Of a DNA stretch of 64,000 nt, positions 1 through 43,373 are shown piece by piece. Under the pieces are notes generated by a model. It was not told the origin of the DNA. It made no database searches and saw only the letters and a program-made list of their open reading frames with translations. A program made the position numbers and the translations under genes. Position 1 is the first letter of the stretch; every line of letters starts with the position of its first letter. Source of the DNA: Octopus sinensis (taxonomy: Eukaryota); assembly GCF_006345805.1 (NCBI RefSeq), contig NC_043002.1, forward strand, positions 102,920,001 to 102,984,000. Direction: 5' to 3'.

Positions 1-1235
1 CGCTCCTCGATATATGTATGAACGAACAGAAATTGCTATTATATATGTCAGGTTAAATGAAAACCAGATCTGTTGGTCACTTTCACCTGCAATCCAAAAT
101 GGGAGTAAATAAAATCTAGCCTCCTTCCATTGTTGCATATTCTGGTATTGCAGGTACCCTCCTCAATGGGGGAAGAACTGCTCATTCCATGTTCAAGCTC
201 CCTCTAAACATTGCAATGAAAGAATCTCAAATGTGCAACATATCCAAAACATGTGCAATGGCAACAATTCTCCAACAAACTTGTCCCACTGTTTGGCATG
301 AGTGCACTGTCACACCGTGGAGCTGCAGAAGTACTTGATCGTACCCTCCCAAGACATAAAAAGCAATAGCATGCTCATGGGATGAGTAACAGTTATTCTC
401 GCAGGAGATTTCCGCCAAGCGTTGCCTGTTGTCAAAAAAAGAAAAAAAACTGATGAGGTCAAAGCATGTTTAAAAAAAAAACGTACCTTTGGAGACGTGA
501 AGAAACTTCATCTTACAAACAACATCAGAGCACTTCTACAAGATGATCATACAACCTTCTTAAGAATGGTAATAGGATATAAACATTCAACTCAAGACTT
601 CAGCTACATGAAATTACATGCGGTCGAATGATACTTTCACCTATGGATTTTATGAATAAAGTAAATCCTAATTTACCTGTCAATTGCACTGATGTAAATT
701 GGCTATGTGAAAGAGCTTCACTAGCTTCCATCTTATGAAATAGTTGATAAACTCAATCATGAAGTTCTTTGAAAGTCTACAGATATACCAGAAATGACTT
801 TCCGTTCAATTGATAACAATCAATCAAGACCAGGTTGTCCAATACCCTGCTGAATTTCTGAACACACTTAAAACCCATTAGGATTCCACCGCATTACTTG
901 ACACTACAACTGTGCGCTCCCATTATGATGCTTACGAATCTTGACCCACATCACCAACGTAATAGAAATCTTTTAATTGTTACCTCCATGAAGCTCTAGG
1001 TCGTGCAAGCAATAAGCATAACAAGTAGTCACAAAGGAGAAAAACGACTTTATTCCAAAAATTCCACGCATGCCTACAGATGTTCCATTTGAATTCAACA
1101 CGCTTAAGCTTCCAGTCAAATTCAGTTTTGCTATTTCCTTTTAGCAAATCTCAGGGCCAATCCCTCAAGGTAGCTGGATTTGCTGTCTTTAGTACAAGCT
1201 TTTCCCATGGTCAAGCACATGTGCACTCACATGCC
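1..1235 (+). mobile_element. Helitron RepHel relic (Rep motif 1 plus PIF1-like helicase), frameshifted and internally deleted; begins before the window
   Basis: Manual translation across frameshifts: PRYMYERT...KPDLLVTFTCNPKW (Rep motif 1, ~5-105); SGIAGTLLNGGRTAHSMFKLPL (helicase Ia, ~140-205); VWHECT; GDFRQALPVV (~405-432); LHLTNNIR; YPAEFLNTL..PPHYLTLQLCAPIMMLTNLDP; IPKIPRMPTDVPFEF..LPVKFSFAI..SKSQGQSLKVAG; FSHGQAHV (~1200-1225). Confidence 0.88.
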
Positions 1236-1364
1236 TATGTGCTCGCACCCTGGTATGCACGATTACATGTAAGCGAAAATACATATGTACATATGAATAA
1301 ATACGCCTGTTTGTGTATGCTTGTATTTGTGTATATGTTAGTATGCGTGCGTGTGTATGTGTAT

Positions 1365-1470
1365 ACTAGGTTTACAAAGAGTAAGTCCTGAGGTCGATTT
1401 TTTCGACTGATAGTGGTTTTCCAGCATGGCCGCAGTGAAATAGCTGCTACAAGTAAAAATAAAAGAAAAA
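1365..1470 (+). mobile_element. 3' tail fragment of SINE family 1
   Basis: Matches 8335-8450 in this window (TTACAAAGA.TAAGTCC..GGTCGATT..TCGACT..CCAGCATGGCCGCAG..ACAAGTAAAA). Confidence 0.65.
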
Positions 1471-2544
1471 TAATAAAAGAATATATGAATGTATAAATGA
1501 ATGTGTGTATACATAGATACACGGAATCTCCTCGCTGTAACCTTTCGATTTGTTCTACATACAATCGTTCCCACTCACCAGATTGACATCTACGCTGAAA
1601 TATTCCTGGTGTCTGGAAAAAATTCGGAAATAAAAGAAAATATTATTTAGCATTATTTTAATCATATATAAAGATTCTATTTTAAGCATTGGCGTGGTTT
1701 ATTTCCTTGTCATATTTCCTTCGCTATCGACTATACTTGGCTTCCTCATTCACAGACTTTAGAAGTCTTATATTTTGCACACAGTACTCTCTAATGTCAT
1801 GACAATCCATATTTATCAGCAACGAGAGAAGCCGAAGAAAAGCAGATAAACGACCAGTGTCCATCAGCGACTATAAAAGCGGCGACTGAGTCGGTTAACA
1901 TAGCTCTTCAGCCAGCCGATAAACTGACACACCTACCAATCCAGAGGGACATCGGAGGAAGAAGTGTTTCATGATAAACTTGTACCTGGCAATCGGCAGG
2001 GACCAATAGCTGGTAATCTTACAAGAGAAGGATCTACTTAGAATGCTCATTGACCGATCCGTGAGGAGCACTTTCTCTGCTTCTTGTGTCACTCCACACT
2101 GGAGCAAATCAGTTTGCATGCATTCCATATTGAGCAATAAACTGATCTGTGGCCTTTTCAGCAGATATCGATCATTTATGTTACACACATACAAAATATG
2201 ACCGCGGAGAAGTCTTTCATGTTTTTCATTCTTTTACCAACACGGAATTTACATAAGACGCATCGGGACGACTGCTTCCTTGGTGTCCATCGAATAAAAA
2301 GCTTATCTGTCACGTATACTACAAAAGTATAGCTTGCAAGGCCAAATCCATTTTCGACTTTGACCGTTTCCTCACATATTTAGAATTACTGTTGTTGTAT
2401 CCGTCATCAGAATCGTTATTTTTGTTGTTGTTGTGGTTCTTGTTACTGTTATTATCCTTGCTATTTTTCATGTTGTTTATCTCTAGGATAACTATGATCG
2501 GCAGGACTTATGATCAATAGCAATATCTGTAAGAATACGATATT

Positions 2545-2545
<1 letters not shown>

Positions 2546-2620
<75 letters not shown>

Positions 2621-2632
2621 TATATATATGTG

Positions 2633-2666
<34 letters not shown>

Positions 2667-2755
2667 TTATATATATATATATATATGTGTGTATATATAT
2701 ATATGTATATATGTATGTATGTATTTATGTATGTATGTATGAAATATGTAAGTAT
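2546..2755. repeat. Compound (CA)n/(TA)n/(TATG)n microsatellite
   Basis: Direct inspection. Confidence 0.95.
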
Positions 2756-3140
2756 GTATGTTTGTTTCAGACATTACATGACGCTACATTTCCCGAAGAT
2801 CTAAGATCAAAGAAGGTCTCGTTGTCATCATATTGTCTTCATCCACAAAATCTAGTAAAATATGTATACAAATATTGTGTGTGCGCGTGCGTGTGCATGT
2901 GTGAGTGCGCACTTGCACCCATGTGTATGTGTGTGTGCGTGTGTGTGTGCGTTTGAAATAATAATAAAAGTTTTGAAAATTGATTAATAATGTCTGTGAA
3001 TAAAACAAAATTGATTGTCTAACATAGGAGGGACGTTTTTGCAATATATATCTACATGTACAAAAGGCAAATTCCCAAAATGTTTTCACGAGCCATGTTA
3101 TATACACGCACTTATATATACAGATGTGTATGTCTGTCTC

Positions 3141-3153
3141 CATGTGTATATAA

Positions 3154-3165
<12 letters not shown>
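3141..3165 (+). repeat. Left copy of candidate 25-bp target-site duplication (right copy 8051-8075)
   Basis: CATGTGTATATAATAATTATATATA vs CATGTATATATAATAATTATATATA, 24/25 identical; low complexity reduces significance. Confidence 0.5.
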
Positions 3166-3220
<55 letters not shown>

Positions 3221-3677
3221 TATATGTATACATATATATATATAGCAGGCATTCGTCGTGACAAGACGTACTTTTCATAGCTCCGGTAGCCAAGGAAGCA
3301 TATTTCAACTCAAGCCAGCAGAAACTCTCCTTGTTTTTAGTCCCAGTACTTTTCAATTCTTCAGTTCTACTATTCTAGTTTTTTACTACCATCGGAGGAT
3401 AAATTTATACAAATCTATATACAACCTGGAGAAAGAAATATAAACCAAAATCAAACCCAAGATTAGTTTTAAAACTAGTCCCGTGAGTACAATTCTTTTT
3501 CCTTGATCTGTATTAAACTCACAGTTCATCCTGATTTGTACTAAATACACTGAACTCTCCCACATACACTCAGATATAGCCACGCATTACCGAATATATC
3601 GACACAAACTTTTCAACGGTGTATTCACTATTATACATCAATAACTAAATATAGAGTATAATGCTGTCCCACTGAAT

Positions 3678-4864
3678 ATGGCCAATAATATTCAAAAACA
3701 CCACTGGGTTGAAAATGAAATCACTGCAATGATAAACGCTTGGTACAGTCACCACAATGAAGCTAATGTTTACAGTAAAATAGCTGAAAAATTAGCAAAA
3801 CAATCCTTTCACAGATCTGTAAAACAGATCGAAAATAAAATAAAATAAATTGTAAGAATATTTCCTATTTTCCACACGCACATGGCAACACTAGAAGCCA
3901 TCCTTGTCAATGAATGTAGTGCACCAAATGACCCAACTCCAACAGGTCGGGGGTCACTTCAACGACCCGATAGCCAGCAACAAACATCTGACCTCATTCC
4001 ACCCATTCCACAGGACTCACTATCACAACAGAGCAGCCTGCTTCTGCTACTACATCGCCAGTACCTGACCCGATTCAACCTAGCCCTGCGGTTGCAAGTC
4101 AAGTCTCACTGCTGCTACAGCAACAACAACACTCTGCTACGGCTACTACAGTCAGAATAGAAAAATCACCACTACACACATATCAAACACACTGCCGTTA
4201 CTATTCTCAAGGCAACTGTAGATTTGGCCCCAGCGGCACCAACAACAATGGACGCTGTGCTTTTTACCATCCTACCTTATGTCGTAGACTTGCTAAGGGC
4301 ACCTGTCCATATGGTATAACGGGAAAAAACTGCCCTCACCTCCACCACAAATACTGTCCTAAATACACAGAGTCTATGGTCCTGATCCCAAATATGGATG
4401 CACAAAAGGCAATGGATGCACCTTCTTCCATCCTAAACTGTGCCAAACTTCTTTGTCACTAAGAATGTGCCTGAACCGAGAATGCAACCACCACCATCGG
4501 AAGGGCACAAAACGATCGCAAAATAAATATAAACAGCAACAGAGGGGATCTTCGACAACAATAAAAAACAAAATACAACCACGTTTCTCCTCCTACAATC
4601 AAACAACAAAGACAGAACCATGAAAAAAACCATACATCAAATAACATGAACATGAAATATGTATCCTCTCACCAAGTGGCAAACCAAGGAGGTAAATCTT
4701 TTTTACTGACTTACCTAGAAAATATGAAGGCCGACTTAAGCCAGGAGATCCAACGAGCTATCAGCAACCACACATGCAAATCACAAGGACCACACACCCA
4801 CTACCAACAAGGAAATCATACACACACAGCTCCATACAAGAACTACCCACATTGTTACCACTGA
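3678..4864 (+). pseudogene. LINE ORF1: N-terminal Myb/SANT-like (trihelix) domain, Pro/Ser/Gln linker, four CCCH-type zinc fingers, C-terminal helical segment; one stop plus frameshifts
   Basis: ATG 3678: MANNIQKHHWVENEITAMINAWYSHHNEANVYSKIAEKLAKQSFHRSVKQIENKIK*IVR, in frame with ATG 3882. At 4193-4515: CRYYSQGNC..CAFYH, CRRLAKGTCPYGITGKNCPHLH, CPKY..GCTKGNGCTFFH, CQTSLSLRMCLNRECNHHH-RKGTKR. ORF 4646-4864 contains SFLLTYLENMKADLSQEIQRAI. Confidence 0.72.
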
Positions 4865-5727
4865 ACAACATAAAACACAACTTAGAACAATGCAAACATC
4901 AAACTTCCTCGACATTCCTGTTAAATGTACGTGGCATCAACCCATCAATTATTGCCCAAAAATGGAAGATCCCATATATAGAGAGCTGGCTTACCGAATC
5001 AGCACATTGCTTCTCTTTCTTTATCCTTACCGAGACACACTTGAACAACACCCATATGGAAGCCGAGATGAAAATAAAAAATTTCACCATTGTTCGTGCG
5101 GATCGCACAGACCGAAATAAGGGAGGGACAGCCATCTTTATCCTTGACTCTTTTTCACTTGATGCGAAGGACATATTTTCCAATGGCTATTGTGAATCTG
5201 TATCACTATTCAGCAAAGCCAAGGACATAATCATTGTTGGTCTTTACAGGCCTCCCCAAGCACCTCTAAAGTGCTTTGAAGAGTGCCTTAGCAAACTCAA
5301 GTCCTTCCTTCGGAAGTACCACTCGGGAAACATACTAGTGATGGGTGATTTTAACCTCCCTTATGTGAACTGGCCCACAAATACTCTGAAGTTAGGCACA
5401 TGCTCCACATCAGATAGTGCAGCAGCAGAACTGCTCTTTAATCTAATGGATGAATACTTCCTGACTCAGCTAGTGCTCGAACCAACGAGACAGAATAAAA
5501 CGATCTTGGATCTGGTATTGACCAATCACTCTAGCTTCGTTCACAGTATTTCAATTGAAAAAACTCTCCTCTCAGACCACGACATGGTACTCTGCAATTT
5601 TAATTCCCGACATATAAAAACCAAACCAGCCAATCCCACTCCATGGCACAAATTTGACAACATAAACTTCCATAAAGGATCTGCCTTTCCTCGACTGGTC
5701 TTTTACTCTCAATTCCACCCATATTGA
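4774..5727 (+). pseudogene. LINE ORF2 apurinic-type endonuclease domain
   Basis: Motifs LLNVRGI, ILTETHL, RADR..KGGTAI, GLYRPP, MGDFN, ILDLVLTN, SDHDMV. Confidence 0.93.
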
Positions 5728-6078
5728 GACCGCATGGCAGCACTTTGAAATAATGTCTCCTATACATGCTCTAAACACGCTCCCACGAAATCTACTAACA
5801 CAAACAGAAACCGGATCCCTAAAAAGAAAAAAACACTCATCAGGCGCATCAAAAGACTTAACAAAAAAAATCAACCAATTAAACTATTCCCACATACGAC
5901 ATCCACATTCAACAACAATGAAAAGGCTGGAAAAACTTCATCTGCAGAACGGCATGAATTCCTCCATTGAAAATCAAAGAGATGTGGAGGAACAGTGGGT
6001 ATTCAAAAATATCAAAATGAACCCAAAAGAGTTCTATTCTTATGCAAATAAGCATAGAACCACTGTCTCACCCATTCA

Positions 6079-7817
6079 TTGATTGATGATCACGGCATTC
6101 CCCAATACGATGCTAAAGAAATGGCAGAAATACTGCAGAAACAATACTGCTCTGTCTTTAGTGTTTCCACTGATATTGACGTAAGAGAACCGAACGAAGT
6201 TGACTCTCAACATAAAATCTCAGACGTAACCTTCATGGCCACTGACATCATAGCAGCAATAAATGAGGTCAAATACTACTCTGCTGTAGGCCCTGATAGA
6301 TTCCCCGCTAGTCTCCTGAAGGAATGTAGACACAAACTGGCAGTCCCTCTGACCAACCTCTGGAGAAATTCGTTAGACGCAGGTCATATACCGAAACAGT
6401 TTCTATCCCAGTCAGTCATCCCGGTTTTCAAACAGAGAAACAGATCCCTCGCACTCAACTATCGCCCAATCTCACTCACCTCCCACATCATCAAAGTGTT
6501 TGAAAGCGTGTTAAGATCAAGGATAGCTGACTTCCTGGAGACCCACAAACTCATAAATGCAAATCAGCATGGATTTCGCTGTGGCAGGGACTGTCTAACA
6601 CAGCTCTTACACCACATTGAAGATGTACTCAAAGCCTTGGGAACAGGTTCGAACTCTGATGTCATATACCTTGACTTCAGTAAAGCGTTCGACAGGGTAG
6701 ACCATAATATCCTACTCTCAAAAGTGGCACATGTTGGAATCTGTGGAAAAGTTCTACACTGGATCAAGTATTTCCTGGCGAATAGAACACAACATATTGT
6801 AGTTGATGGAGTCCACTCAAGCCCAGCAAAAGTCACCAGCGGTGTCCCCCAGGAGACTGTCTTGGGTCCGCTACTCTTCATAATCTACATAAACGACCTT
6901 TCCAGTGTCGTACATTACTGCAAAGTGAAAATATTTGCTGATGACACTAAGCTCCAGCAAATCGTCAATGAAGAAGCAGACCGAACTCAACTCCAGTCTG
7001 ATCTATATGCTGTGAGTCAATTGGTGGACAGAAACCAAATGCAACTGAACGAGGGAAAATTTGAGCTGATGCATTTTGGAAGAAATTCCTCAATAAAACA
7101 GCCATACTCTATTCCTTCAGGGTAACCGCTCACAACCTCTAACAATATCAGATACCTGGGTGTAATTGTTGATGACGATCTCAGTTGGAGTGCACACATC
7201 AACAAGAAGGTCGATATAGCTCGTAGGATGAGTTCCTGGATCTTAAGAACTTTCCTGTCCAGAGAACAAGGTGTCATCATACCACTTTTCTCCTTCTTTG
7301 TACAGCCACACCTCGAATACTGCTGCCAACTGAGGTCTCCCCATACAAGACAAAACATCTCGAGGATTGAATCACCCCAGAGGGCACTCACTAAATGAAT
7401 TGAAGGCATGCTGCTCTCGATTACTGGGATTGCCTTAAAGCCTTGAAACTCTACCCTCTCCAGCTTCGCCGTGAACGGTTCATCATTTGTACTATGTGGA
7501 GAATATACCGCCAACATTGCTCAAACGATCTGAACATTAGCTTCAAGGTTCATCCAAGACTGGGACCACGGGCCATACGTCCCCTGTCTAATTCAAGATC
7601 ACAACATACATGTACACTACGACATAATCTCTTTTCCTCAACAGGCCCTGCCCTATTTAACATTGTTCCGAAAGAGATCAAAGAGGAACAGGATCCCATC
7701 AACTTTAAACGGAGTCTGGATAGATTCCTTCAAGGAATACCAGATAAGCCACCCATAATTGGATACAACTCACCCAACAAAAACTCACTACTTGAATGGA
7801 CCATAAACAAAACTTGA
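6079..7817 (+). pseudogene. LINE ORF2 reverse transcriptase and C-terminal domain (interrupted)
   Basis: YRPISLTSHIIKVFE, QHGFR, YLDFSKAFDRVDH, SGVPQETVLGPLLFIIYIND, FADD; downstream YLGVIVD, PHLEYCC, RRERFIICTMW. Confidence 0.95.
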
Positions 7818-7895
7818 CTTAAACACGATTCAAATAATCCTATCAGGTGGTGCTATTAAGTTAGACATGGCCTGGACCAATCATTGGTCGAAACG

Positions 7896-7912
7896 TATCC
7901 AAGTTTATCTAA

Positions 7913-7964
<52 letters not shown>

Positions 7965-7976
7965 TTAGATAAACTT

Positions 7977-7981
<5 letters not shown>
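7896..7981. repeat. ~25-bp perfect inverted repeat of the LINE tail around a (TA)n spacer
   Basis: TATCCAAGTTTATCTAAGTTTACAT-(AT)n-ATGTAAACTTAGATAAACTTGGATA. Confidence 0.9.
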
Positions 7982-8033
<52 letters not shown>

Positions 8034-8075
8034 ATATATATACATATATACATGTATATATAATAATTATATATA

Positions 8076-8455
8076 GGCGCAGGAATGGCTGTGTGATAAG
8101 TAGCTTGCTTACGAACCATATGATACTGGGTTCAGTTCCAATAGGTGGCACCTTGGGTAAGTGTCTTCTACTATAGCCTAGGGTCGACCAATAGTTTGTG
8201 GGTGGATTTGGTAGACGCAAACTGAAAGAAACCCGTGATATATAAATATATACCAACATCACATGACAACTGATGTTGGTGTATTTACGTCCCCGTAACT
8301 TAGCTGCAATACATACCGATAGAATAAGTAGTAGGTTTACACAGAATAAATCCTGGAGACGATTTGCTCGACTGAAGGTGGTGCTCCAGCATGGCCGCAG
8401 TCAAAATGACTGAAACATGTAAAATAATACAAGAGTGAAAGAATAAAAGAATAGC
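8076..8455 (+). mobile_element. tRNA-derived SINE family 1, near full length
   Basis: A-box-like TGGCTGTGTGA and B-box-like GGTTCAGTTCC; internal (TA) tract; tail GGTGGTGCTCCAGCATGGCCGCAGTCAAAATGACTGAAAC plus AAAAGAAT repeats; a second copy lies at 18918-19310 (-). Confidence 0.85.
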
Positions 8456-8547
8456 AGAATATATAACTATTATCAACTATCATCAAATATATAACATCGA
8501 GTTGTGCGGTCAATACGGGACAGACGTGATGCCTCAACTTAAGTATC

Positions 8548-8725
8548 TGGACAAAATGTATAGCGGTATTTCGCTACACCTGAGTTCAAATTCCGCCGAG
8601 GTTGACTTTTCCTGTCATGCTTTTGGGGTTGATAAAATAAGTACTAGTTGAACACTGGTGTCCATGTAATCGACTCATCCCTCTCCTAAAATTACAGCCG
8701 TTGTGGCAAAATTTGAAATCATTAT
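8548..8725 (+). mobile_element. tRNA-derived SINE family 2 (5'-decayed) with (ATT)n tail
   Basis: B-box-like GAGTTCAAATT then CCGCCGAGGTTGACT..TCAT..GGGGTTGATAAAATAAGTAC; homologous to 36125-36345 and 55700-55835. Confidence 0.8.
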
Positions 8726-8729
8726 TATG

Positions 8730-8807
<78 letters not shown>

Positions 8808-8830
8808 TATTGTTGTTGTTGTTGTTGTAT
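8725..8830. repeat. (ATT)n-(AGT)n-(GTT)n compound microsatellite
   Basis: Direct inspection. Confidence 0.95.
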
Positions 8831-11498
8831 CAGTGGTAGTAGCAATAGTAGTATCAAGCTCACCTTCCTCCCCATCCCCCTCTTCCTTGTCATCATCATT
8901 ATCATCATCATCATGGTAAACTGGTATGTACAGCAGGTAGCCTGTGAGAGAACTATAATCTTAACAACTGTATTTTCCAGACTTTTAATTGTCCATGTTC
9001 CACAACCATATCAGAGAAAACAGAGAGAAGATATTACAACCCCTGAGCAGTTTTTATCGATGTTAATCTGCATCACCATCAGAAGAGAATTTACTTCTTT
9101 CTGTTTTTTTTTTCCTTCTTTTCACTTTCAAGAAATTAAATTAACAGGGACGTGTCTGAAATATTCTGGCACCGCTAACAGCCATGCTTGTTTCTATTAT
9201 CTTCTCCTCGACGAAAGCATCAATTTTATTACAGACGGACAGTTGGGTGGTAATAATACAATGTACTACGTTAACGCCATGACAGGCACACTGAAATTCC
9301 CCTTTCCGTACTGTACATTTTTCCTCTCATTCTATCCTTCGAGAGAAATAGATGCTCCGAAATGCGGCCGTCCTCTGATGATAATGAAATCAATTACAAC
9401 CTTTGGCGTTGGAAACTTCCAACGTGTTCTTTTTAATTTAATTTATCGCGTAAAAAGATAGACACAAATATCTTTAAGGGCAAACACAGTAAACAGAAAG
9501 TGAGTTTATCTTTCAGTTATTTGTTCTCCCAATAAACAGCATCGTATATTATTTTCCATGTTTGTTCTGTTCTTTTTTTCTTTTTCACTTCGAACAGAAT
9601 AATGCAAACTATTAGTATGGCGTGTGTGTGTGTGGCTCAGTGGCCAAGATTTAGTCGACTGAATGTTAAGTGAAGAGGCGAATGTAAGAAATGTTCTCAG
9701 ATTAATTGGTAGCGGTTTCGATATTATGTTGTATCAATTACCCCAGATGTTATCGATGCATTTCCTTAGTATCGTATCTATGGATAGTTTCACAATGAGT
9801 ACTCTATCAACCTTGATGACAGCATGCTGTTTCTTGAAATAGCAACCATATTTTCTTATCGTGAAAAGGTATGAAGGGTTTGCTTTTGGAGAGAGAAAGA
9901 GTTGAGTGGTTGGTAGAACTATTTGGGAAAAAAGAGTTGAAATAGCACCATTTCAGTATAGATACGACGAGCTGCCGGTTGTTGCATTTTTGGACGATAT
10001 AAAGCAGCATTTGTTGCAATTTTGTGTTCAGGATAAGATACAAGACTGTAAAGTAAAACTGTAATTTAAGAAACAGTAAAATGGAACTACCTACTTTGTG
10101 GGGTAGGAAAGCCATTTCATTCTCATTTTAATTATATTCATCATTCATCCGATATGTATTTTCATGTACCCCCAATGTATTGCTTTGTCTGTCCATGTGC
10201 TGTCCCCCTATGTTATGGCCGTAGTGCCAAAAAAAAAATTAAAGTAAGGTTCAATAGGATTCTGGATGCCCCTTGTTTTTTGGGCTTTGTGCTTTGTGTT
10301 AGGCATTTATGGAATTATTTTATGCTCCAGAATTCGCCAGAAGTTTTTGCTTGTCAGTTTTTAAATAATTTCTGTGTCACATCTGGGTGAGTGAAAAATA
10401 AATCTATTATGCTATGTTGTAATACTCATGTAAAATTTGAATCCTCCATTTTAGACAGGTTGTGTAGTAATTTTCCCATTATATAAATAGCTAGATGGTG
10501 TATGAATTTTTCGTTTTGTATGTGGGCTGTGTTTTTTATGCTAACATTTGATTGTTGATAATATCTTATAAAAAGACTTCATGGTGTATTGTTTTGGGTT
10601 TACCGCATCCTTGTGTGTTGTGTAAATTCGGGTTATGGCCACCAGGTCGTAACAATATATATGTGTGTATGTATCTATATAAAGTGTATTATATATGTAT
10701 GCGTACATATAATCATATGCATGCTTACAATTACCAGCATATGAACGCTCACAAAAAATCTGCTAGTGGTCCGACCCTAAAAGAAGATACGTGTCCGAAC
10801 GCTCATGGAAATTATGAACTTTCTGGAAGGCTACCTCAATACTTTCGATAAATAAATAATGAATCATTTGTTCAACATTCAACAAATTAACAGGTTTCGT
10901 TTTTACGCTAACGTCAGGTGAAATTTGAAAACATAGCGGAATATATATATATATATATATATTTGTGTATAAATCAACTGAAAATGCCAGTTCGAAATTC
11001 TATTAGCTTCGAATCATTTGTAATGGAAAATAAGTTTGTTCAACGTTTTAGATATCGTAAAACTATAGGAAATCTCAAAATATATAACTTTGTATCAGGT
11101 CAAGAAAATATAAAGGAAATGCGCAAGATTTCAGGTTTTAAAACAAACGCTTTTTAGATAATGAAAATCACAACGCCTGGATATTTCATTAGGTAAAATT
11201 CGATTGCTAAATGTTTTAAACACAAACTTTATACAGCCTTACGTCTTTGTGGTAATGGAAGTTGCACAAACATGCATGTTATATTTGCTCGCTAATGTAG
11301 CCTTGTTATAATTGTTGATGTTGTTGTTGTAGGTAATTGTTAGTGTATTCTTTTATTTTCCTCCAATGGAATGTATGTAATAATATAATTTAATGCAATA
11401 TAACTTAACACGTTTAAACACGCTGAAATTTCTAATGCTTGGATTGCCAAACAGAATTCAATTTTAAGACAGAAATTCAAGAATAAGAAGTACAAGCA

Positions 11499-11715
<217 letters not shown>

Positions 11716-12404
11716 AGGTATATGTATATATGTATATGTATGCATATATATTTATACACACACAGACACACACATATATACATATGTGTGTGTGCATAAG
11801 TGTGTGTGTGTGTTATACCATACATATTTGATAGAGGTTGTATGATAAACGCACACGCATAGACAAACACATCAACACGGGCTCATATGCACATATATGC
11901 GCTTACGTATATGCATTTTATACACAAACACACACACACACAAACGCATATATACGCATGAGTGTGACTGTGTGCGTCTAAGTACACATACCTTTATAAC
12001 CACACATATGTGCACGGGTGCAAGGGTAGGTGGCTGTGTACTTAAGTGACGTTTAAAACATGAATCACATTAGCGAGTATGGAAGCTCTAAAATATTTAA
12101 AGATTTGCAAAAAAGGAAAAGACATTTCGATTTATATTAAGTGAATAGAGCTTGTGTGTTGTACTTAAAAGAGGATTATCGGTTTAAATGTAAGAATTCC
12201 GATGTAAGTTTAAGTTCACTGGCATAACCTCGCATACACACCATAGACAATTAGATCTCATAAAACAACGGATGAACGTGTATTGCAATACATTGGTTAT
12301 TGGAGACTTTAAATCGTGGATGGCAGTGTTAGAGAAAAATGTTTAAGAATAAACTCCGTTTTCGTTGGCATACTTATTCAAGTGGTAATGGTAGTATTGC
12401 TGCA

Positions 12405-12994
12405 GCGGCAGCAGTAGTAGTAGTAGTTGCGGTGGTTTGTAGTAGTGGTAGCAATAGCGGTAGTGTAGCAGTATTAATAGTAGTAGTAGTAGTAGTAGTA
12501 GTAGTAGCAGCAGCAGTAGTAGTAGTAGTAACAGCAGTAGCAGTAGTAGTTGTAGTAATAGTAGAAGTAGTAGCAGCATCAGTAGTAGTAGTAACAGCAG
12601 TAGAAGTAGTAGTAGTTGTAATAGTAGAAGTAGTCGTAGTAGCAGTAGTATTAGTAGTAGTAGTATTGACAGCAGCAGTAGTAGTAGCAGCAGAAGTAGC
12701 GGTAGTAGTAGTAATATTAGTAGTAGTAGAAGTAGTGGCGGTAGTAGCAGTAGTAGCAGTAGTAATAGTAGAAATAGTAGCAGTATCAGTAGTAGTGGTA
12801 GTAGTATCAGTAGTAGTAGTAGTAGCAGTAGCTCTAGTAGTAGTAGTAGTGGCAACAGTAGCAGCAGCAGCGGCAGTAGTAGTAGTAGTAGTAGTAGCAG
12901 CAGTAGTAATAGTAGTAGTAGTGGTAGTAGTAATAGTAGTAGTATAGTAGTAGTAGTAGCAGCAGCAGCAGCGGTAGTAGTAACGGTAGTAGCG

Positions 12995-17439: not shown

Positions 17440-17700
17440 AAAGTCAAGATAGAAAATGCTAAAATAATTTTATAAATAAGATTTCAATACCGGTCTCAGT
17501 CATTGAGACTCTCTAAACTGTAACCATTAAACAATTAAATTTAGAAAAAAAGAGAAGTTTTTTTAAAAGAATATTTGTACATTGTTCAAATACAAGTGGC
17601 ATTTTCCTTGTTTCTGCCTGTCTCTGTCTCTCTTGTTTACTCTTGTTTACTCTTGCATGTCCTTGTGAATTCTTGGTAGGGAAGAAGAAGAAAAAGAAGG
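17440..17700 (-). mobile_element. Diverged pLTR/3' UTR of the 38.9-43.5 kb Penelope-like family, with decayed hammerhead (~17480-17525)
   Basis: Aligns by eye with 37520-37770 (AGAAAATGCTAAAATAATTTT..TACCGGT..TTTAGAAAAA..AAGTGGCATT..TTCTTGGTAGGG). Confidence 0.8.
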
Positions 17701-17820
17701 AGGAGGAGGAGAAGGGGAAGAAGGAGAAGAAGAAGAAAAAGAAGAAGAAGAAGAAGAAGAAGAAGAAGAAGAAGAAGAAGAAGAAGAAGAAGAAGAAGAA
17801 GAAGAAGAAGAAGAAGAAGA
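17681..17820. repeat. (GAA)n microsatellite
   Basis: Direct inspection. Confidence 0.95.
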
Positions 17821-17891
17821 ATGTCTCCGTTTTGACGTATTAAAAAGTTAGACCGGTTGAAGTAAAGTAGTTGTTAGGTTAATGTTGTTAT

Positions 17892-18240
17892 GTGTCCTCT
17901 TTTCCATTTTTGTGGTGGGCGGATAGAACAGGGGCTAAATTTTGGATTGATTTTAAAACTGATGCCAATATCATTTGTGCAGTATTGAGGGAATATTTTC
18001 CACATCATACAAATGATGTAACGCTCCTGGCGGCGTTGGAGAGAGTAGAGATTGATATTGTTTTTAGTCGATTAGAAAAACTCAAGCATTATTCTCTCGA
18101 ATGCCAGCGTGAGCGCTACATCATCTGCATGATGTGGGAAATATTCCGTCATCTTTGCCCAAATGATGATCGCATACTCATATCTCATAAAAACAATAGG
18201 GCACAGCCCTTTCACCCCAATTGGCCCCGCTCTACCACGC
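17892..18240. mobile_element. Two divergently oriented ORF2 C-terminal fragments of a LINE related to the 3.2-7.9 kb element
   Basis: Minus 17892-18012: MMWKIFPQYCTNDIGISFKINPKFSPCSIRP. Plus ~18050-18240: LEKLKHYSLECQRERYIICMMWEIFRHLCPND. Compare 7443 ORF: RRERFIICTMWRIYRQHCSNDLNISFKVHPRLGPRAIRP. Confidence 0.75.
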
Positions 18241-18917: not shown

Positions 18918-19135
18918 TTCTTTTATTTGTTTCAATCATTTGACTGTGGCCATGCTGGAGCACCGCCTTTAGTCGAGCAAATCGACCCCAGGACTTATTC
19001 TTTGTAAGCCTAGTCCTAATTCTATCGGTCTCTCTTGCAGAACCGCTACGTGACGGAGACGTTAAACACACCAGCTTCGGTTGTCAAGCAATGTTTGGGA
19101 GGGACAAACACAGACACAAACATATACACGCACAA

Positions 19136-20700: not shown

Positions 20701-20890
20701 ACTGAAATTGGAATTGAGTGACCTGTAGAACTATTAGAAAAGTTTTGCCTCCTTGGCACGTCCGGAATAAGCAGGAAATTATTTTAGATAGCTGAAAAGA
20801 ATGAATAACTAGGTACCGTAGGCTACAAGCAGTAAGCCCACTACGCATGCAAGAATCGAGGAGCTATAGCGAAACCTATGATAAAGAGAT
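20700..20890 (+). mobile_element. Extreme 3' end of a second RLE LINE family, copy A2
   Basis: Homologous to 51755-51930 (GAAATTGGAA..GTAGAACT..TTTTGCCT..TAGCTGAAA..GTAGGCT..TAAGCCCACTACG.ATGCAAGA). Confidence 0.75.
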
Positions 20891-20919
20891 AATACTAATA
20901 ATACTAATACTACTAATAA

Positions 20920-20921
20920 TA

Positions 20922-20994
<73 letters not shown>

Positions 20995-21065
20995 CGACGA
21001 CGACGACGACAACAACAACAACAAAAACAACAACAATAAAATGATGATGATGATGATGATGATGA
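20920..21065. repeat. (GAT)n/(GAC)n/(AAC)n microsatellite
   Basis: Direct inspection. Confidence 0.95.
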
Positions 21066-22622: not shown

Positions 22623-25600
22623 ATTTCAGTTAATGATGTTGATATCACAAACCTCAACCACCTATACTATGCATCCGCGAAAATCTCAACGATCCTATGT
22701 GGTGTAAAGATTAGAAAACGGCAACAGTCCCACAAAAAGCCTTCTTGGTAAGAGCGTCTGCATCAACAAATTAAAGTATTTAGATCTGACATTGAATATT
22801 TGAAAAACCTTAAGGCTCACAAGACTACCAAACCTACAAAAACCCAAAAATTACTGAAAAAATACAATATGAAAACTATACTTGATATTGATGCCACCAT
22901 AGAAACCATCAAACAAAAGGTATCTGCCAAAGCTACCCGCATAGCGAGGTATGAAAAGCGTGTTAGATTTTTCAAGGACAACATGTTCAAAATAACACCA
23001 AGAATTTTTACAGGAAGATAGGAAAACAGCGTTTACTGCAGGGTCTGTACCATCAAAAGAAGAAGTGCAGAGTTTTGGAATAAAATCTGGGCAGAAGAAA
23101 AAAACACACAACGAAAAGGCCCCCTGGATTGACAGAATATCTACAGAACTGGACCCCTTAGAAGAGCAAAAGTGGGAGGGTGTCAAGGTAGAAGATATAA
23201 GATCTGCTCTCAGGAGGTCAAGCAAATGGAAGTCTCCAGGAAAGGATAAAATTCCTAACTTCTGGCTGAATGCCTCCCAGAGCCATGAACTGCTAACAGA
23301 ACTGTACAATGATGTCTGCAACAACACCCTAGTAGGATCCTCCTTGGCTAGTTAATGGGTTAACATTCCTGCTTCCAAAAAGTGAAGAAACAAATGAACC
23401 AAAAAACTATAGACCCATAACCTGCTTAACAACTATGTACAAAACTCTAACATCTGTCCTGACGGAATATACCTATAGTTTTTTAACAGACAACAGCATA
23501 TTCCCTAATGAACAGAAAGGATGTAAACGTGGATCCTACGCCTGTAAAGACCAACTACTCATCAATAAGATGATCTTAGAAGATTGTCACAAACGACACA
23601 AAAACTTATCAATAGCCTGGATAGACTATAAAAAGGCTTTTGATAGCCTACCACATAGCTGGATTAGGAAATGCCTTGAAATGTATAAGATAGCACCAAC
23701 TCTGCGAAACTTCTTGACTGTAAGTATGAGATCATGGAGAACCACACTAACTCTGAACAGTGACAGTGAATCCCTAAATGCTGGTGATGTAAAAATTTCG
23801 TGTGGCATTTTCCAGGGTGACTCACTGTCACCACTCCTCTTTGTTTTATCCTTAATACCTCTCTCAAAGCTGCTCAATGACGCGCAGTACGGGTATAAAA
23901 TGTTTGATAAAAATATAAATCATCTCGTTTACATGGATGATTTAAAGCTTTTTGCAAAAAATGATCAACAACTCAAGGCTTACTAGCGATAGTCAAACAA
24001 TTCAGTGACGACATCAGAATGCAATTCGGCCTCGATAAATGTGCAAAGCTACCTTTATCAAGGAAAAATGACAGAAACATCTAACGTTAACCTTGACCAA
24101 CAGAATGTCATAAAAGAACTAGACCCAGCGGAGAGCTACAAGTACCTAGGGGTAATTGAAGGGAACGGAATAAGGCATTCAAAGATGAAGGAAAGGATCA
24201 GGAGAGAATGCTATCGAAGAGTGAGAGCAATACTCAAGACAGAGCTGAATGCAAGAAACAGGATCGAAGCAAAATGCATTAGCTATACCAGTCGTGACTT
24301 ACAGTTTCAATATTGTTAACTGGTCAATTACTGAAATATGTCAGCTCGACAGGAAAATAAGGAAACTGTTGACAATGCATAGAATGCACCACCCTAAGGC
24401 AGATACAGAACGACTCTATCTGCCAAGAAAAGAGGGAGGCCGTGGTCTTTTGCAACTGGCAATAACAATGAAGATTGCTACAATTGGCCTAGACACCTAC
24501 CTGAAAAACTCTGAGGACTGGATGTTAAAACTTGTCTCAAAACATGAAACAAGAAAGCATCGTACTCAGTCACAAAACAGGCAAAGGAATATCTAAGTGA
24601 ATTCCGAATACAACCAATTTTGGAATTAGAGATAGACATACAAGAAACAAGCACAGAAAAAGCTAGGCGCATGAAACCCGTGCCAAAACTGCGGCCTTAG
24701 ATATTCTGAATAATAAATGGCAAGAAAAACCTACGGCAAATACCCAAAGAGAGCGAATAATGCAGATATCGACAAAGCCCTGACCCATTAATGGCTAATG
24801 GCCTCTGGCTTAAAATCTGAAACAGAGGGGTTTATCATAGCAGCTCAAGATCAATGCCTACCAACAAGAAACTACCAGGCCAACATATTAAAGATCAGAA
24901 GCAGTCCAACGTGTCGTGTATGCAAGCAACAAAATGAAACCATTGACCATGTGGTCTCCAAGTGCAGTCTTCTAGCGCCTACAGAGTATCTCACAGGCAC
25001 GATAGAGCTGCACAATATATTCACTGGGTAATCTGTAAAAACCTGGAGTTGCCCCATGAGAAAAACTGGTGGGAACACAAACCACCCCCAGTGCTTGAAA
25101 ATGACCACATCTCACTCCTCTGGAACTTCACCATTCAAACTGACAGGAAGATAGATGCAAATAGGCCAGACATCATATTGAAAGACTTCAAACAAAGAAC
25201 ATGCCTCCTCATTGATATGACTGTCCCAATCGATATAAACGTATCTGTCAGGACCTACAAAAACTGAGCAAATATAAAGATCTTAAAATAGAAATCAGCA
25301 AAATGTGGAAGCTGAAGACTAAAACAATACCTGTTGTCATAGGTGCCCTGGGAATGATAGCAAAAGGGCTGATAGCTACCTAACTCAGATACCAGGAAAC
25401 CCAAAAATGGCAGAAGTTCAAAAGATAGTGCTCATGGGAACTGCTCATATATCCTACGCAAAATACTCTCTATGTAACCTCAAGGTTTAAAACAACCATA
25501 ATTTTCGGTTTAAAAAAAAAAAAAAAATTTTTTTTTTTAGACATTCATTAGTACAACACATCCCCACCCCCCAAATATATGGCACACTAGGCATAACAAC

Positions 25601-36124: not shown

Positions 36125-36460
36125 AGGCGGCGAGTTGGCAGAATCGTTAGCACGCCGGGCGAAGTGCTTAGCTGTAATTCGTCTGCAGCTACGTTATGAG
36201 TTCAAATTTCGCAGAGGTCGACTTTGCCTTTCATCCTTTCGGGGTCGATTAAATAAATACCAGTTACGCACTGGGGTCGATGTAGGCGACTTAATCCCTT
36301 TGTCTGATCTTGTCTGTCCTCTCGGTGAATAGCTCCTTGTGAGCAGTAAAGAAATGGAAAGCCGCCCATGTCCACTTTGCAACTCATTCTTTCGGGGTCG
36401 ATTAATTAAGTTCCAATTGCGTACTGGGGTCGATATAATCGGCTGTCCCCCTCCCCAATG
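36125..36460 (+). mobile_element. tRNA-derived SINE family 2, full head, plus partial internal duplication (36385-36460)
   Basis: GGCGGCGAGTTGGCAGAATCGTTAG (A-box-like), GAGTTCAAATT (B-box-like), GAGGTCGACTTTGCCTTTCATCCTTTCGGGGTCGAT central block. Confidence 0.85.
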
Positions 36461-37130: not shown

Positions 37131-37504
37131 TGGGTTATTTGTGTAGTAAAAATTAACACCAGAAACCAGAAAGCAATTTGTTATTTGTGACAAATATATA
37201 TTTGTTGCATGAAAAATAAGGTATACCTTGTTCATGTGTTTAATATTTTGAGGTTATTTTTGTGTTTCGCAGCTATGCGATTTATGATTCGCATGTTCTC
37301 AACGTATTACACAAACGTCAGTTTTCATGTCCACTGCTCCATCAAAGCCTCAAGGAAATTTTACCGATCGCGTCATACAGAGCGAAATCTACGTTGATGC
37401 TTGACACAACATTGTTTCGTTTCATCACATGTGTGTGTGTGTGTGTGTGTGTAAATATGTATATATATAGATATATATGCGTGTATATATGTATATATAT
37501 ATAT

Positions 37505-42000: not shown

Positions 42001-42610
42001 ATACATCTCCACACACAACCCTCTCAATAACGAAGCCATCGACACCATCCTCCACAACATACCCCTCCTAAAAAAATACCACAGAATGAACACAATCCTC
42101 CAACACACACGATCATAAAAAGCAAAAGACAGCCTAGATCCATGAAAAGTCTCCTTACACAAGCCCGAATTCACTCTTCAACACAGAAGCCGACAGTAAA
42201 AAAATGTGGAAGACCCAATTGCGGGATATGCGACTATCTAATTGAGGGATCAGAGTTCTCCTTCAAACAGGGACAACGGTTTACAGTGAAACGCAACTTC
42301 ACATGTGCTTCGGACAACCTAATATACTCACTAACCTGCTCCGGGTGTCAAGAGCAGTACATAGGCCAAACAAAAAACGGTTTGCGTAAACGAATGGCCC
42401 TGCACAGATCCCAGATAAAAATTCCCCAAAACAGAAAAATAGCTTTTAGCCAACACATAGATACTTGCGCCAACAAAACACACCAAACTCAGAATTTTCC
42501 CCCTCTACCAATTTAGGGACGATACAACCTCGAGACAACGAATAAGTAAAGAAAATCTCTTTATTACAAAATACAAGCCACTTCTTAACGGGTCTACGAC
42601 AAACAATTAA
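39087..42610 (+). pseudogene. PLE polyprotein (long N-terminal region, RT, Cys linker, GIY-YIG endonuclease), multiple frameshifts and stops
   Basis: Pieces at 39036-39416, 39568-40080, 40462-40875, 41329-41652 and 42142-42516; terminal TAA 42608-42610. Confidence 0.9.
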
Positions 42611-43325
42611 TATACCTCAACTTTAGAATAAAAGAAAATATATATACACACACAAATATTACACTCCATAGAATCCATTACTAATCAGCCCCTTCATAGC
42701 TATACTTACACCCATTCATATTCTCCCTTCTCTGTTTTTTTTTTCTTCTTCTCTTCTTCTCTATCATCATTCTTATCATCATCATCGTCGTCATCATCAT
42801 CACCATCATCACCACATCTTCTCCTCTCCTTCCTTCTTCTTTCTTCTTCTCTTCTTCTTCTTCGTCTTCTTTTCTTCATTCACATCATTATCATCATCAT
42901 CGTCGTCATAATCATCACCACCATCACCATCATCGTCATCTTCCCTTCTCCTTCTTCTTCTTCTTCTTCTACTTCTCAACCCCCTACCCCTTAACTTTGT
43001 CACTAATGTTTTTTAGTATAACACCTACGCTAATTCTATAAACAAGCCTGTCAATATAAATATTCTCCTGAATTGAACTGAGACTGCCAGCCGCCACTGA
43101 CCATTCAAAATACGACCATCCGGCACTCCCAGATTCTCCCACCCCACATTCCTCACCAGCCTTCTTCCTCTACTACCCTACCAAGAACTCACAACGACCT
43201 CCAACACACAAGTGCAAACAAGGGAGTCAGAGAAGCAGCAGAATGCCACTTAAATCTGAACACTACTATAGAAATATTCTTTTAAAAAAATTTTCTTCTA
43301 ATTTTTCTAAATTTAATTATTTAAT

Positions 43326-43373
43326 CGTTACAGTTGAAAAGGTCTCAAAATGACCGAAACCGGTACTGAAATG
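43326..43373 (+). ncRNA. Minimal hammerhead ribozyme (U3-A8 variant) in 3' pLTR; predicted cleavage after 43365
   Basis: Identical to 38924-38971. Confidence 0.8.

What the first reader, a model, noticed from the sequence alone, without database searches (positions are those of the whole stretch)
3678..4864. LINE ORF1 with a Myb/SANT-like DNA-binding domain fused to four tandem CCCH zinc fingers
Seen: a 56-aa frame from ATG 3678, below the ORF-track cutoff, reads HHWVENEITAMINAW...NVYSKIAEKLAKQSFHRSVKQIENKIK. It follows the W-x-x-x-E-x-x-x-hh-x-x-W ... Y/W-x-x-IAEKL...R-S/T-x-x-Q-x-x-x-K pattern of trihelix Myb/SANT-like domains (Myb_DNA-bind_4/MADF type). One TAA (3846-48, plausibly from CAA) separates it, in frame, from ATG 3882. 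After a Pro/Ser/Gln linker come four C-C-C-H motifs (4193-4515). Established: described LINE ORF1 types use RRM+CCHC, L1 transposase-22, PHD or esterase modules, while Myb/SANT-like proteins are typical of PIF/Harbinger DNA transposons and MSANTD/trihelix factors. Inference: this ORF1 pairs a dsDNA-binding HTH with an RNA-binding CCCH array. It could act as a self-regulating transcription factor or tether the RNP to targets such as (TA)n. I do not know of this combination being described.
Basis: partly seen in the sequence, partly recalled or inferred. Interest (0 to 1): 0.8.

Follow-up and report, generated by a model that had tools for sequence, protein, structure and literature searches.

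The report
LINE ORF1 with Myb-like domain
A dead copy of a LINE retrotransposon carries a first gene that once joined a Myb/SANT-like DNA-binding domain to a row of CCCH zinc fingers. I did not find this domain combination in the papers I could search, and related LINEs carry a PHD-like finger where the Myb-like domain sits.

Summary
Window 3246-7975 is one decayed APE+RT LINE lying between TA-rich flanks that look like a target-site duplication. Residues 8-62 of the frame from ATG 3678 match Pfam Myb_DNA-bind_4 above the curated cut-off (E 6.7e-9). An AlphaFold model is closest to the Arabidopsis GT-1 trihelix domain. The TAA at 3846 lies inside helix 3, so it is a secondary mutation.

Four CCCH units sit at 4193-4497. 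Their Cys and His residues are invariant across ORF1 homologues that lie directly upstream of APE/RT ORF2s.

Distant relatives carry a non-homologous helical plus PHD-like module in place of the Myb domain. This looks like a module swap within a PHD-CCCH ORF1 family that the papers I read do not describe.

Support that the Myb domain is a family feature is moderate. A second copy shares the 5'UTR, ATG, Myb and linker collinearly without the stop. A third copy links the linker motif to the CCCH array and APE. No copy other than the window spans Myb to CCCH.

DNA or chromatin tethering is inferred, not tested. I rate this a new variant of a known kind, of moderate interest.

The parts
3144..3245 (.). 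TA-rich 5' flank, near-duplicate of 7975-8076 (looks like a target-site duplication)
   Evidence: Local alignment of the two flanks shares non-TA signatures and the same end...TATATATAG
3246..3677 (+). 5' UTR of the LINE
   Evidence: Lies between the flank duplicate and ATG 3678. Positions 3468-3677 align collinearly with L003 upstream of its homologous ATG
3699..3863 (+). Myb/SANT-like (Myb_DNA-bind_4, trihelix-type) domain, frame A, ORF1 residues 8-62
   Evidence: Pfam E 6.7e-9, 36.5 bits against a cut-off of 27. AF2 pLDDT about 90 over residues 11-60. Top PDB fold match is the GT-1 trihelix domain 2jmw, TMq 0.62
3846..3848 (+). In-frame TAA inside helix 3 of the Myb-like domain (secondary mutation)
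   Evidence: In alignment A4 the stop falls between K56 and I58...F62, which match the family's K-x-L...Y/F positions. The L003 copy has a sense codon here
3882..3884 (+). In-frame ATG (Met69), conserved in the L003 copy
   Evidence: Invariant M69 in alignment A3
3864..4192 (+). Pro/Ser/Gln-rich linker with two DLIP-type motifs (3987-4010 in frame A, 4064-4087 in frame C) and a frameshift between 4011 and 4063
   Evidence: The motifs are 77 nt apart here and 102 nt apart, in frame, in L001
4193..4270 (+). CCCH unit A (C-x7-C-x12-C-x3-H), frame C, found only in the window and P0001
4280..4345 (+). CCCH unit B (C-x7-C-x8-C-x3-H), frame C. The second and third Cys and the His are invariant in all 9 homologues; the first Cys is present in 8 of 9
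4355..4431 (+). CCCH unit C (C-x13-C-x5-C-x3-H once the 2 extra nt at 4367-4368 are discounted), frame C then B
   Evidence: P0002 reads CPKFRVYGPDP without a break. C, C and H are invariant
4441..4515 (+). CCCH unit D (C-x8-C-x4-C-x3-H) followed by the conserved KGTKR, frame B
   Evidence: Invariant C256, C265, C270, H274, K276, T278, R280 in A1
4555..4565 (+). Approximate site of the third ORF1 frameshift (B to C), in an A-run
   Evidence: P0001 is in frame across this point
4697..4762 (+). Conserved C-terminal segment SFLLTYLENMKADLSQEIQRAI, a possible oligomerisation helix
   Evidence: Invariant among the window, P0001 and P0002, and recognisable in P0003-P0005
4862..4864 (+). ORF1 stop codon
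   Evidence: Follows ...HCYH, which is homologous to ...QCCH at the ends of P0001 and P0002
4774..7817 (+). ORF2 with APE (about 5023-5589) and RT (about 6457-7083), decayed
   Evidence: Pfam Exo_endo_phos_2 3.5e-14 and RVT_1 1.7e-26. Aligns to residues 3-959 of the 970-aa ORF2 of L006 at 35-41%. Stops and frameshifts listed
7818..7975 (+). 3' UTR ending in a 20-nt perfect inverted repeat around (AT)20 (7899-7918 and 7959-7978)
7975..8076 (.). TA-rich 3' flank, near-duplicate of 3144-3245

Best explanation
Window 3246-7975 is a dead, full-length copy of an APE+RT LINE.

In its active ancestor, ORF1 encoded a single protein of about 395 residues. It had four parts in order:
- an N-terminal Myb/SANT-like three-helix domain;
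- a Pro/Ser/Gln-rich linker of about 100 residues;
- four CCCH zinc-finger units, three shared by the whole family and one duplicated in this lineage;
- a conserved C-terminal helical segment.

The CCCH array and the C-terminal segment are the family's core. I infer that they bind the LINE RNA and assemble the ribonucleoprotein particle.

The N-terminal position is an exchangeable accessory slot. Distant relatives hold a helical plus PHD-like (chromatin-reader type) module there. This lineage holds a Myb/SANT-like module instead. I infer that it tethers the particle to DNA or chromatin, at the target or in the nucleus.

Shown: the domains, their order, the conservation, the LINE context and the decay.
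Inferred: translation as one protein in the ancestor, RNA binding by the fingers, and DNA or chromatin binding by the Myb-like domain.
For: Myb-like domain:
- Pfam match above the curated cut-off.
- AF2 model with pLDDT about 90 over residues 11-60. Its best PDB match is the GT-1 trihelix domain, followed by Zeste and the ZZZ3 Myb-like domain.
- The stop codon falls inside helix 3, with I58 and F62 on the family's conserved hydrophobic positions.

One insertion:
- The flanks 3144-3245 and 7975-8076 are near-duplicates.
- No inverted or direct repeats flank the Myb block.

Other copies:
- L003-L005 align collinearly to 3468-3986 (E 1e-24). They share the 5'UTR, the ATG, the Myb C-terminal half, Met69 and LEAILVN.C.AP.D, with identical spacing and no stop at 3846.
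- L001 is a LINE copy 70% identical over 4208-5886. Its reading frame is open from the contig start and holds two in-frame DLIP motifs like the window's linker.

Selection (dN/dS):
- Myb-linker, window against L003: 0.48.
- CCCH region, window against L001: 0.16-0.23.
- ORF1 C-terminal region: 0.47.

CCCH family:
- Nearly all Cys and His residues of units B-D are invariant in 9 homologues. The exceptions are the first Cys of unit B (8 of 9) and of unit C (absent in P0001).
- L006 and L007 carry such ORF1s directly upstream of APE or APE+RT ORF2s.
- The weak best PDB matches are all RNA-binding tandem CCCH proteins: MBNL1, CPSF30 and ZC3H12A.

Module swap:
- hhalign finds no homology between the Myb module and the relatives' N-terminal module (probability 0.2%).
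- That N-terminal module has a C4HC3 PHD-type pattern. Its best PDB match is the MTF2 PHD finger, E 0.19.
Against: - Only the window joins Myb and the CCCH array on one stretch of DNA, and there a stop and three frameshifts interrupt it.
- L003 loses similarity after about 4010 and shows no CCCH in its last 290 nt. It could be a relative of a donor sequence rather than a LINE copy.
- The overlap between L003 and L001 is only the short DLIP motif.
- L003 itself is degenerate. It has two TGA and one TAG in the standard code, and its Pfam Myb match is only E 0.16.
- The dN/dS for the Myb-linker rests on 59 codons and is of borderline significance.
- The AF2 alignment was made from Myb_DNA-bind_4 repeats, so the model leans toward that fold. 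All Foldseek E-values are above 0.3.
- The Pfam CCCH matches are below the curated cut-offs.
- No intact copy, transcript or protein was seen. No function was tested.
Confidence: 0.62

Rival explanations
1. One-off or dead-end chimera. A fragment of a Myb/SANT-like gene, from the host or from a PIF/Harbinger-type element, was joined to the 5' part of this LINE lineage by template switching, 5' transduction or recombination. It never served as an ORF1 domain of an active element.
For: - No copy other than the window spans Myb to CCCH.
- The block shared with L003 (3468-4010) has ends that coincide with loss of similarity on both sides.
- All database scans for more Myb-bearing copies found nothing.
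Against: - The block is on the sense strand and starts with a conserved ATG. It is in frame with the linker, which L001 shows to be LINE sequence.
- No TIRs or TSDs surround it.
- It sits where relatives have an N-terminal module.
- dN/dS of 0.48 is below 1.
- No close donor exists among 1.8 billion representative proteins. The best non-family hits are generic repeat proteins at 34% identity or less.
Confidence: 0.17
2. Separate upstream ORF. The Myb-like peptide is encoded by its own short ORF (3678-3848), and ORF1 proper starts at the conserved ATG 3882. The element would then make two proteins rather than a fusion.
For: - The TAA at 3846 is followed 33 nt later by an ATG that is conserved in L003.
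- The 56-residue peptide alone still scores 34.9 bits against Myb_DNA-bind_4.
Against: - The Pfam match and alignment A4 continue across the stop. I58 and F62 occupy conserved helix-3 positions, so a 56-residue product would lack the end of the recognition helix.
- L003 has a sense codon at that position and identical spacing.
Confidence: 0.1
3. The CCCH part is normally expressed on its own, and the Myb-linker part is a dispensable or decaying leader in this lineage.
For: L001 looks young: its CCCH ORF is intact for 237 codons and its APE has one stop. Yet it has its own frameshift between the linker and the fingers, and an ATG 16 codons before the first Cys.
Against: - The window has no ATG in the CCCH frame before the fingers.
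- The frameshifts of the window and L001 lie at different places, so they are independent events.
- Distant relatives have one continuous ORF1 of 436-477 aa.
Confidence: 0.08
4. The Myb-like resemblance is due to chance.
For: The domain is short, lacks about 9 residues of the helix 1 to helix 2 loop, and has no significant PDB sequence match.
Against: The Pfam E-value is 6.7e-9 and above the curated cut-off. phmmer against 1.8 billion proteins returns only Myb_DNA-bind_4-type repeat proteins and the family copy. The best fold match is the archetypal trihelix domain.
Confidence: 0.02

Closest known systems
Type III (PHD-containing) ORF1 of CR1/L2-lineage LINEs (Khazina and Weichenrieder classes, as summarised by Metcalfe and Casane 2014, PMC4120745)
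   Same: - ORF1 of an APE+RT LINE with an N-terminal accessory reader-type module.
- The window's distant relatives (P0003, P0005, P0007, P0008) have a C4HC3 PHD-type pattern at the N-terminus.
- Modular exchange of ORF1 domains is the published theme.
   Different: - The window's ORF1 has no PHD. It has a Myb/SANT-like domain that is not homologous to the relatives' module.
- That paper does not mention CCCH fingers or Myb (0 occurrences).
- The RT clade of the window's element was not determined.
R2 element protein N-terminus (zinc fingers plus a Myb domain that bind the rDNA target; PMC12503042)
   Same: A LINE-encoded Myb-type domain next to zinc fingers at a protein N-terminus. In R2 these bind target DNA upstream of the nick.
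   Different: - R2 has a single ORF, a restriction-like endonuclease, and C2H2-type fingers that act on DNA.
- Here the Myb-like domain is of the Myb_DNA-bind_4 (trihelix) type, sits in ORF1 of an APE LINE, and the fingers are CCCH, a type that usually binds RNA.
Myb-like DNA-binding protein of PIF/Harbinger DNA transposons, and the trihelix/MSANTD factors of the Myb_DNA-bind_4 family (from my own knowledge, not tested here)
   Same: The same Pfam family and fold type as the window's N-terminal domain. It is a transposon-encoded accessory DNA binder.
   Different: - No DDE transposase, TIRs or short TSD surround the block.
- It is fused to a LINE ORF1.
- No close Harbinger-type donor was found.
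Tandem CCCH RNA-binding proteins (MBNL1, CPSF30, ZC3H12A)
   Same: Cys-Cys-Cys-His units in tandem. These are the only kind of protein among the best, weak PDB profile matches.
   Different: - E-values are 0.02-0.4 and Pfam scores are below the cut-offs.
- Spacings are unusual (x12, x8 and x13 loops).
- RNA binding was not tested.

Membership tests
Myb_DNA-bind_4 (PF13837; Myb/SANT-like, trihelix type) | Profile match at or above Pfam's gathering score | tested here: met
   36.5 bits against 27, E 6.7e-9, residues 8-62, profile positions 2-66 of 89. 34.9 bits for the 56-aa ORF alone
Myb_DNA-bind_4 (PF13837; Myb/SANT-like, trihelix type) | Three-helix bundle fold like solved trihelix or Myb-like domains | tested here: met
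   AF2 helices at 12-25, 31-41 and 48-55+, with pLDDT about 90. The top Foldseek hit is the GT-1 DNA-binding domain 2jmw (probability 0.99, TMq 0.62, rmsd 2.2). Caveats: the alignment was drawn from the same family, and E is 0.37
Myb_DNA-bind_4 (PF13837; Myb/SANT-like, trihelix type) | Sequence-specific binding to double-stranded DNA | not testable with these tools
   Needs EMSA or SELEX with a domain built from a family consensus
Tandem CCCH (C3H1) zinc fingers | Cys-Cys-Cys-His ligand sets conserved among homologues | tested here: met
   Nearly all ligand residues of units B-D are invariant in 9 sequences at 20-53% identity. The first Cys of unit B is present in 8 of 9, and that of unit C is missing in P0001
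Tandem CCCH (C3H1) zinc fingers | Profile match at or above Pfam's gathering score, with canonical C-x7-8-C-x4-5-C-x3-H spacing | tested here: inconclusive
   The best match is zf-CCCH_4 at 19.1 bits against 24.6. P0008 reaches zf-CCCH at 20.6 against 20.5. Only unit D has canonical spacing
LINE ORF1 (first ORF of an APE+RT non-LTR retrotransposon) | Lies directly upstream of, and on the same strand as, an ORF2 with APE and RT domains, within one insertion | tested here: met
   The homologues' ORF1s sit the same way in L006 and L007
ORF1 Type I (RRM + CCHC), Type II (Transposase_22) and Type IV (esterase) | Presence of the named domains | tested here: not met
   No RRM, zf-CCHC, Transposase_22 or esterase match at E up to 10 in any ORF1 piece
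ORF1 Type III (PHD) | PHD finger in ORF1 | tested here: not met
   The window's ORF1 has no C4HC3 pattern. Relatives P0003, P0005, P0007 and P0008 have one, with a weak match to the MTF2 PHD finger at E 0.19
PIF/Harbinger element (Myb-like ORF plus DDE transposase) | TIRs and a short TSD around the Myb-coding unit, with a DDE transposase nearby | tested here: not met
   No inverted or direct repeats flank 3246-4300. The neighbouring ORFs are LINE APE and RT
CR1, L2 or Jockey clade (by RT phylogeny) | Placement of the RT domain in a reference LINE phylogeny | not tested
   No reference set of LINE RTs was available. The only pointers are the Pfam Exo_endo_phos_2 match and the PHD-type ORF1 of relatives

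The most novel reading that the evidence does not exclude
The Myb/SANT-like domain is a working, sequence-specific DNA binder that gives this LINE lineage a target preference, for example for the (TA)n tracts in which this copy sits, or that drives its own 5'UTR promoter. ORF1p would then choose the target or regulate transcription, rather than only packaging RNA. The PHD-to-Myb swap would be a natural experiment in retargeting a LINE.
Probability: 0.15. Interest if true: 0.7.

Novelty: new variant of a known kind. Interest (0 to 1): 0.45.

Why it matters
LINE ORF1 proteins are known to be modular, but the published catalogue I could read (RRM+CCHC, Transposase_22, PHD, esterase, coiled coil) lists neither a Myb/SANT-like domain nor a CCCH array. 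The data here suggest two additions.
- A widespread ORF1 type built on three conserved CCCH fingers, usually preceded by a PHD-like finger.
- A lineage in which that chromatin-reader slot is filled by a DNA-binding-type domain.

If the N-terminal slot does tether the particle to chromatin or DNA, comparing the PHD and Myb versions would give a direct way to test how ORF1 proteins affect where LINEs integrate. For genome annotation, the practical point is that Myb_DNA-bind_4 hits in such genomes can come from LINE ORF1 remnants rather than from host factors or Harbinger elements.

Tried and rejected
- Other copies in the window: tblastn of the conceptual ORF1 against the window finds only the locus itself.
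- Word-indexed protein searches with the Myb-linker, alone and as an alignment with P0011, returned nothing beyond P0011.
- Scans of metagenome, prokaryotic-genome and viral contig collections with the ORF1 and Myb alignments gave no confirmed relatives. Two alignments were too diverse to scan with.
- Exact look-ups of three window ORFs, meant to identify the source genome or twin copies, were not on record. The organism remains unidentified.
- AF2 with a two-sequence alignment gave pLDDT 52, which is unusable. It was replaced by a 16-sequence alignment.
- A PDB sequence search with the Myb alignment gave only coiled-coil noise, with B-MYB at E 0.06.
- Programmed -1 frameshift between the Myb-linker and CCCH frames. 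I considered this because the window and L001 show the same frame offset. I rejected it because the DLIP motifs place the two shifts at different positions: in the window between motifs 1 and 2, and in L001 after motif 2 with a 13-nt gap.
- A conserved 3'UTR motif between the window and L006 scored no better than shuffles.
- Rfam found nothing in 1-12000.
- Khazina and Weichenrieder 2009 is not held in the library.

Full report
**What is there**

Window 3246-7975 is one non-LTR retrotransposon on the + strand.
- Pfam finds an APE endonuclease (Exo_endo_phos_2, 3.5e-14) in the frame from 4774 and a reverse transcriptase (RVT_1, 1.7e-26) in the frame from 6079.
- The whole ORF2 aligns to residues 3-959 of the 970-residue ORF2 of a full-length LINE from a marine metagenome (L006) at 35-41% identity.
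- The element lies between two TA-rich stretches, 3144-3245 and 7975-8076. They share non-TA signatures and the same last bases. I read them as a long target-site duplication in a (TA)n tract, although low complexity makes the exact edges uncertain.
- The copy is dead. ORF2 has frameshifts near 5740, 6075 and 7400 and several stops.

**The Myb-like segment**

- ATG 3678 opens a 56-codon frame that ends at TAA 3846.
- With the stop masked, residues 8-62 match Pfam Myb_DNA-bind_4 at 36.5 bits (cut-off 27, E 6.7e-9). The 56 residues alone give 34.9 bits.
- phmmer against 1.84 billion representative proteins returned seven hits. Six are long proteins made of repeated Myb_DNA-bind_4 domains. The seventh is a 101-residue protein, P0011, which is a second copy of this same unit.
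- In an alignment with those repeats (A4), the stop falls inside helix 3. K56, I58 and F62 occupy the family's conserved K-x-L...Y/F positions. The window lacks about nine residues of the loop between helices 1 and 2.
- An AlphaFold model from that alignment has pLDDT about 90 over residues 11-60 and three helices.
- Its best PDB match is the DNA-binding domain of Arabidopsis GT-1, the archetypal trihelix (probability 0.99, TMq 0.62, rmsd 2.2 Å). Zeste and the ZZZ3 Myb-like domain follow.
- The E-values are weak, as expected for a 60-residue domain, and the alignment biases the model toward this fold. The Pfam match is therefore the primary evidence.

**The CCCH array and the frames**

- The four units are at 4193-4270, 4280-4345, 4355-4431 and 4441-4497, followed by KGTKR.
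- They are not in the Myb frame. The reading frame changes from A to C in the linker, from C to B through two extra bases at 4367-4368 inside unit C, and from B to C near an A-run at about 4560.
- The last two shifts are private to this copy, because the homologues P0001 and P0002 read straight through.
- A search of 5.8 billion proteins with the conceptual ORF1 found eight homologues.
  - Two are close: P0001 at 54% and P0002 at 44% identity. Their DNA is about 70% identical to the window from the fingers into the APE region.
  - Six are distant, at 33-50% identity.
- Across all nine sequences, nearly all Cys and His residues of units B, C and D, and K-T-R of KGTKR, are invariant. The first Cys of unit B is present in 8 of 9, and that of unit C is missing in P0001. 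Unit A exists only in the window and P0001.
- Pfam CCCH matches are below the cut-offs.
- A family profile finds only tandem CCCH RNA-binding proteins at the top of the PDB list: MBNL1 at E 0.018, then CPSF30 and ZC3H12A.
- These proteins are true LINE ORF1s. In L006 the 450-residue P0003 lies 104 nt upstream of a 970-residue APE+RT ORF2. In L007, P0007 is followed by an APE ORF.
- Between the window and L001, dN/dS is 0.16-0.23 over the fingers.

**What sits at the N-terminus in relatives**

- The four full-length distant homologues have about 170 N-terminal residues: a helical region and a C-x2-C...C-x2-C-x4-H-x1-2-C...C-x2-C pattern.
- The best PDB match of that pattern is the PHD finger of MTF2, at a weak E of 0.19.
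- Profile-profile comparison finds no homology between this module and the Myb module (probability 0.2%).
- The window's lineage therefore has a different module in the same slot. This fits the published picture of reticulate, modular ORF1 evolution in the Jockey/CR1/L2 superfamily, where PHD is common (PMC4120745).

**Is the Myb domain a family feature or a one-off?**

In favour:
- The block lies inside the TSD-flanked insertion, on the sense strand and behind a 432-nt leader. No inverted or direct repeats surround it.
- Contigs L003-L005, from three sequencing runs of another sample set, align collinearly to 3468-3986 (59% identity over 534 columns, E 1e-24; shuffles score at most 28 bits against 99.7). 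The aligned region covers 210 nt of 5'UTR, the same ATG, the Myb C-terminal half, a sense codon where the window has TAA, the same Met69, LEAILVN.C.AP.D and a DLFP motif, with identical spacing.
- L001, which continues into the CCCH array and APE, has a frame open from its first base containing two in-frame DLIP motifs 34 codons apart. The window has the same two motifs 77 nt apart. This locates the window's first frameshift between 4011 and 4063 and shows that the linker is LINE sequence.
- dN/dS between the window and L003 over 59 gapless codons is 0.48, similar to the ORF1 C-terminal region at 0.47.

Against:
- No second stretch of DNA joins Myb to CCCH.
- L003 loses similarity after about 4010 and is itself degenerate. 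It has two TGA and a TAG, and P0011 was called only because TGA was read as Trp.
- The link between L003 and L001 rests on a five-residue motif.
- Every further search for copies failed.

I put the family-feature reading at about 0.6.

**How it most likely works**

- Shown: the domain order Myb-like, linker, CCCH x4 and conserved C-terminal segment, in an ORF1 upstream of APE+RT.
- Inferred from what these domain families do elsewhere: the CCCH array binds the element's RNA, the C-terminal amphipathic segment helps assembly, and the N-terminal module tethers the particle to DNA or chromatin.
- The swap between a PHD-type reader and a Myb/SANT-type module suggests that the slot serves chromatin or DNA contact rather than RNA packaging.
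- A role in choosing (TA)n targets or in activating its own promoter is possible but rests on a single insertion.
- In R2 elements, an N-terminal Myb domain with zinc fingers binds target DNA (PMC12503042). That is a functional precedent, not a relative.

**Novelty**

- Full-text searches for ORF1 with Myb, SANT, Myb_DNA-bind_4 or CCCH found nothing relevant.
- The main ORF1 survey, a 2026 CR1-group survey and a gastropod LINE survey mention neither.
- The library is incomplete. Khazina and Weichenrieder 2009 is not held, and Kapitonov and Jurka 2003 was not checked.
- I rate this a new variant of a known kind: a new ORF1 architecture within the known principle of modular ORF1s.
- Interest is moderate. 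The evidence comes from decayed copies, the clade and host are undetermined, and no function was tested.

Noticed in passing
window 7899-7978: A perfect 20-nt inverted repeat, CCAAGTTTATCTAAGTTTAC, flanks (AT)20 at the 3' end of the LINE. These are the only two copies in the window (0.02 expected by chance). It could be a tiny inverted, 5'-truncated second insertion sharing the (TA)n tail, or a hairpin-forming 3' end.
   Followed up: partly
window 3144-3245 and 7975-8076: The element is flanked by TA-rich near-duplicates of about 100 nt with shared non-TA signatures. This would be an unusually long target-site duplication within a (TA)n microsatellite. L003 also starts with (TA)n about 590 nt upstream of its Myb ATG.
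   Followed up: partly
L001 positions 1-240: This fairly intact LINE copy (CCCH ORF intact, one stop in the APE) has its own frameshift between the linker and the fingers, and an ATG 16 codons before the first Cys. The CCCH part may be expressible without the N-terminal part in that lineage.
   Followed up: partly
L003-L005 (P0011): The 101-aa protein in the database exists only because the gene caller read TGA as Trp. In the standard code the copy has two TGA and one TAG.
   Followed up: yes
window 23360-23953 (+) and 17916-18056 (-): Two further LINE fragments from a different family: an RT piece and an ORF2 C-terminal piece, at 24-40% identity to the ORF2 of L006.
   Followed up: no
window 37503-38849 and 42102-43429: A large inverted duplication with arms 96-100% complementary in several blocks and about 3.2 kb between them.
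   Followed up: no
window 8582-8673, 36198-36289, 36351-36442, 55707-55798; also 1364-1440, 8329-8405, 18939-19040: Two short interspersed repeat families (73-85% and 82-86% identity), probably SINE-like elements. One copy begins just after the LINE's 3' flank.
   Followed up: no
window 8700-8830, 12385-12920, 17630-17890, 20876-21050, 37900-38210, 42716-42950: Long imperfect trinucleotide arrays (ATT/AGT, AGT/AGC, GAA, GAT/GAC). They create spurious long ORFs such as 8703-9461.
   Followed up: no
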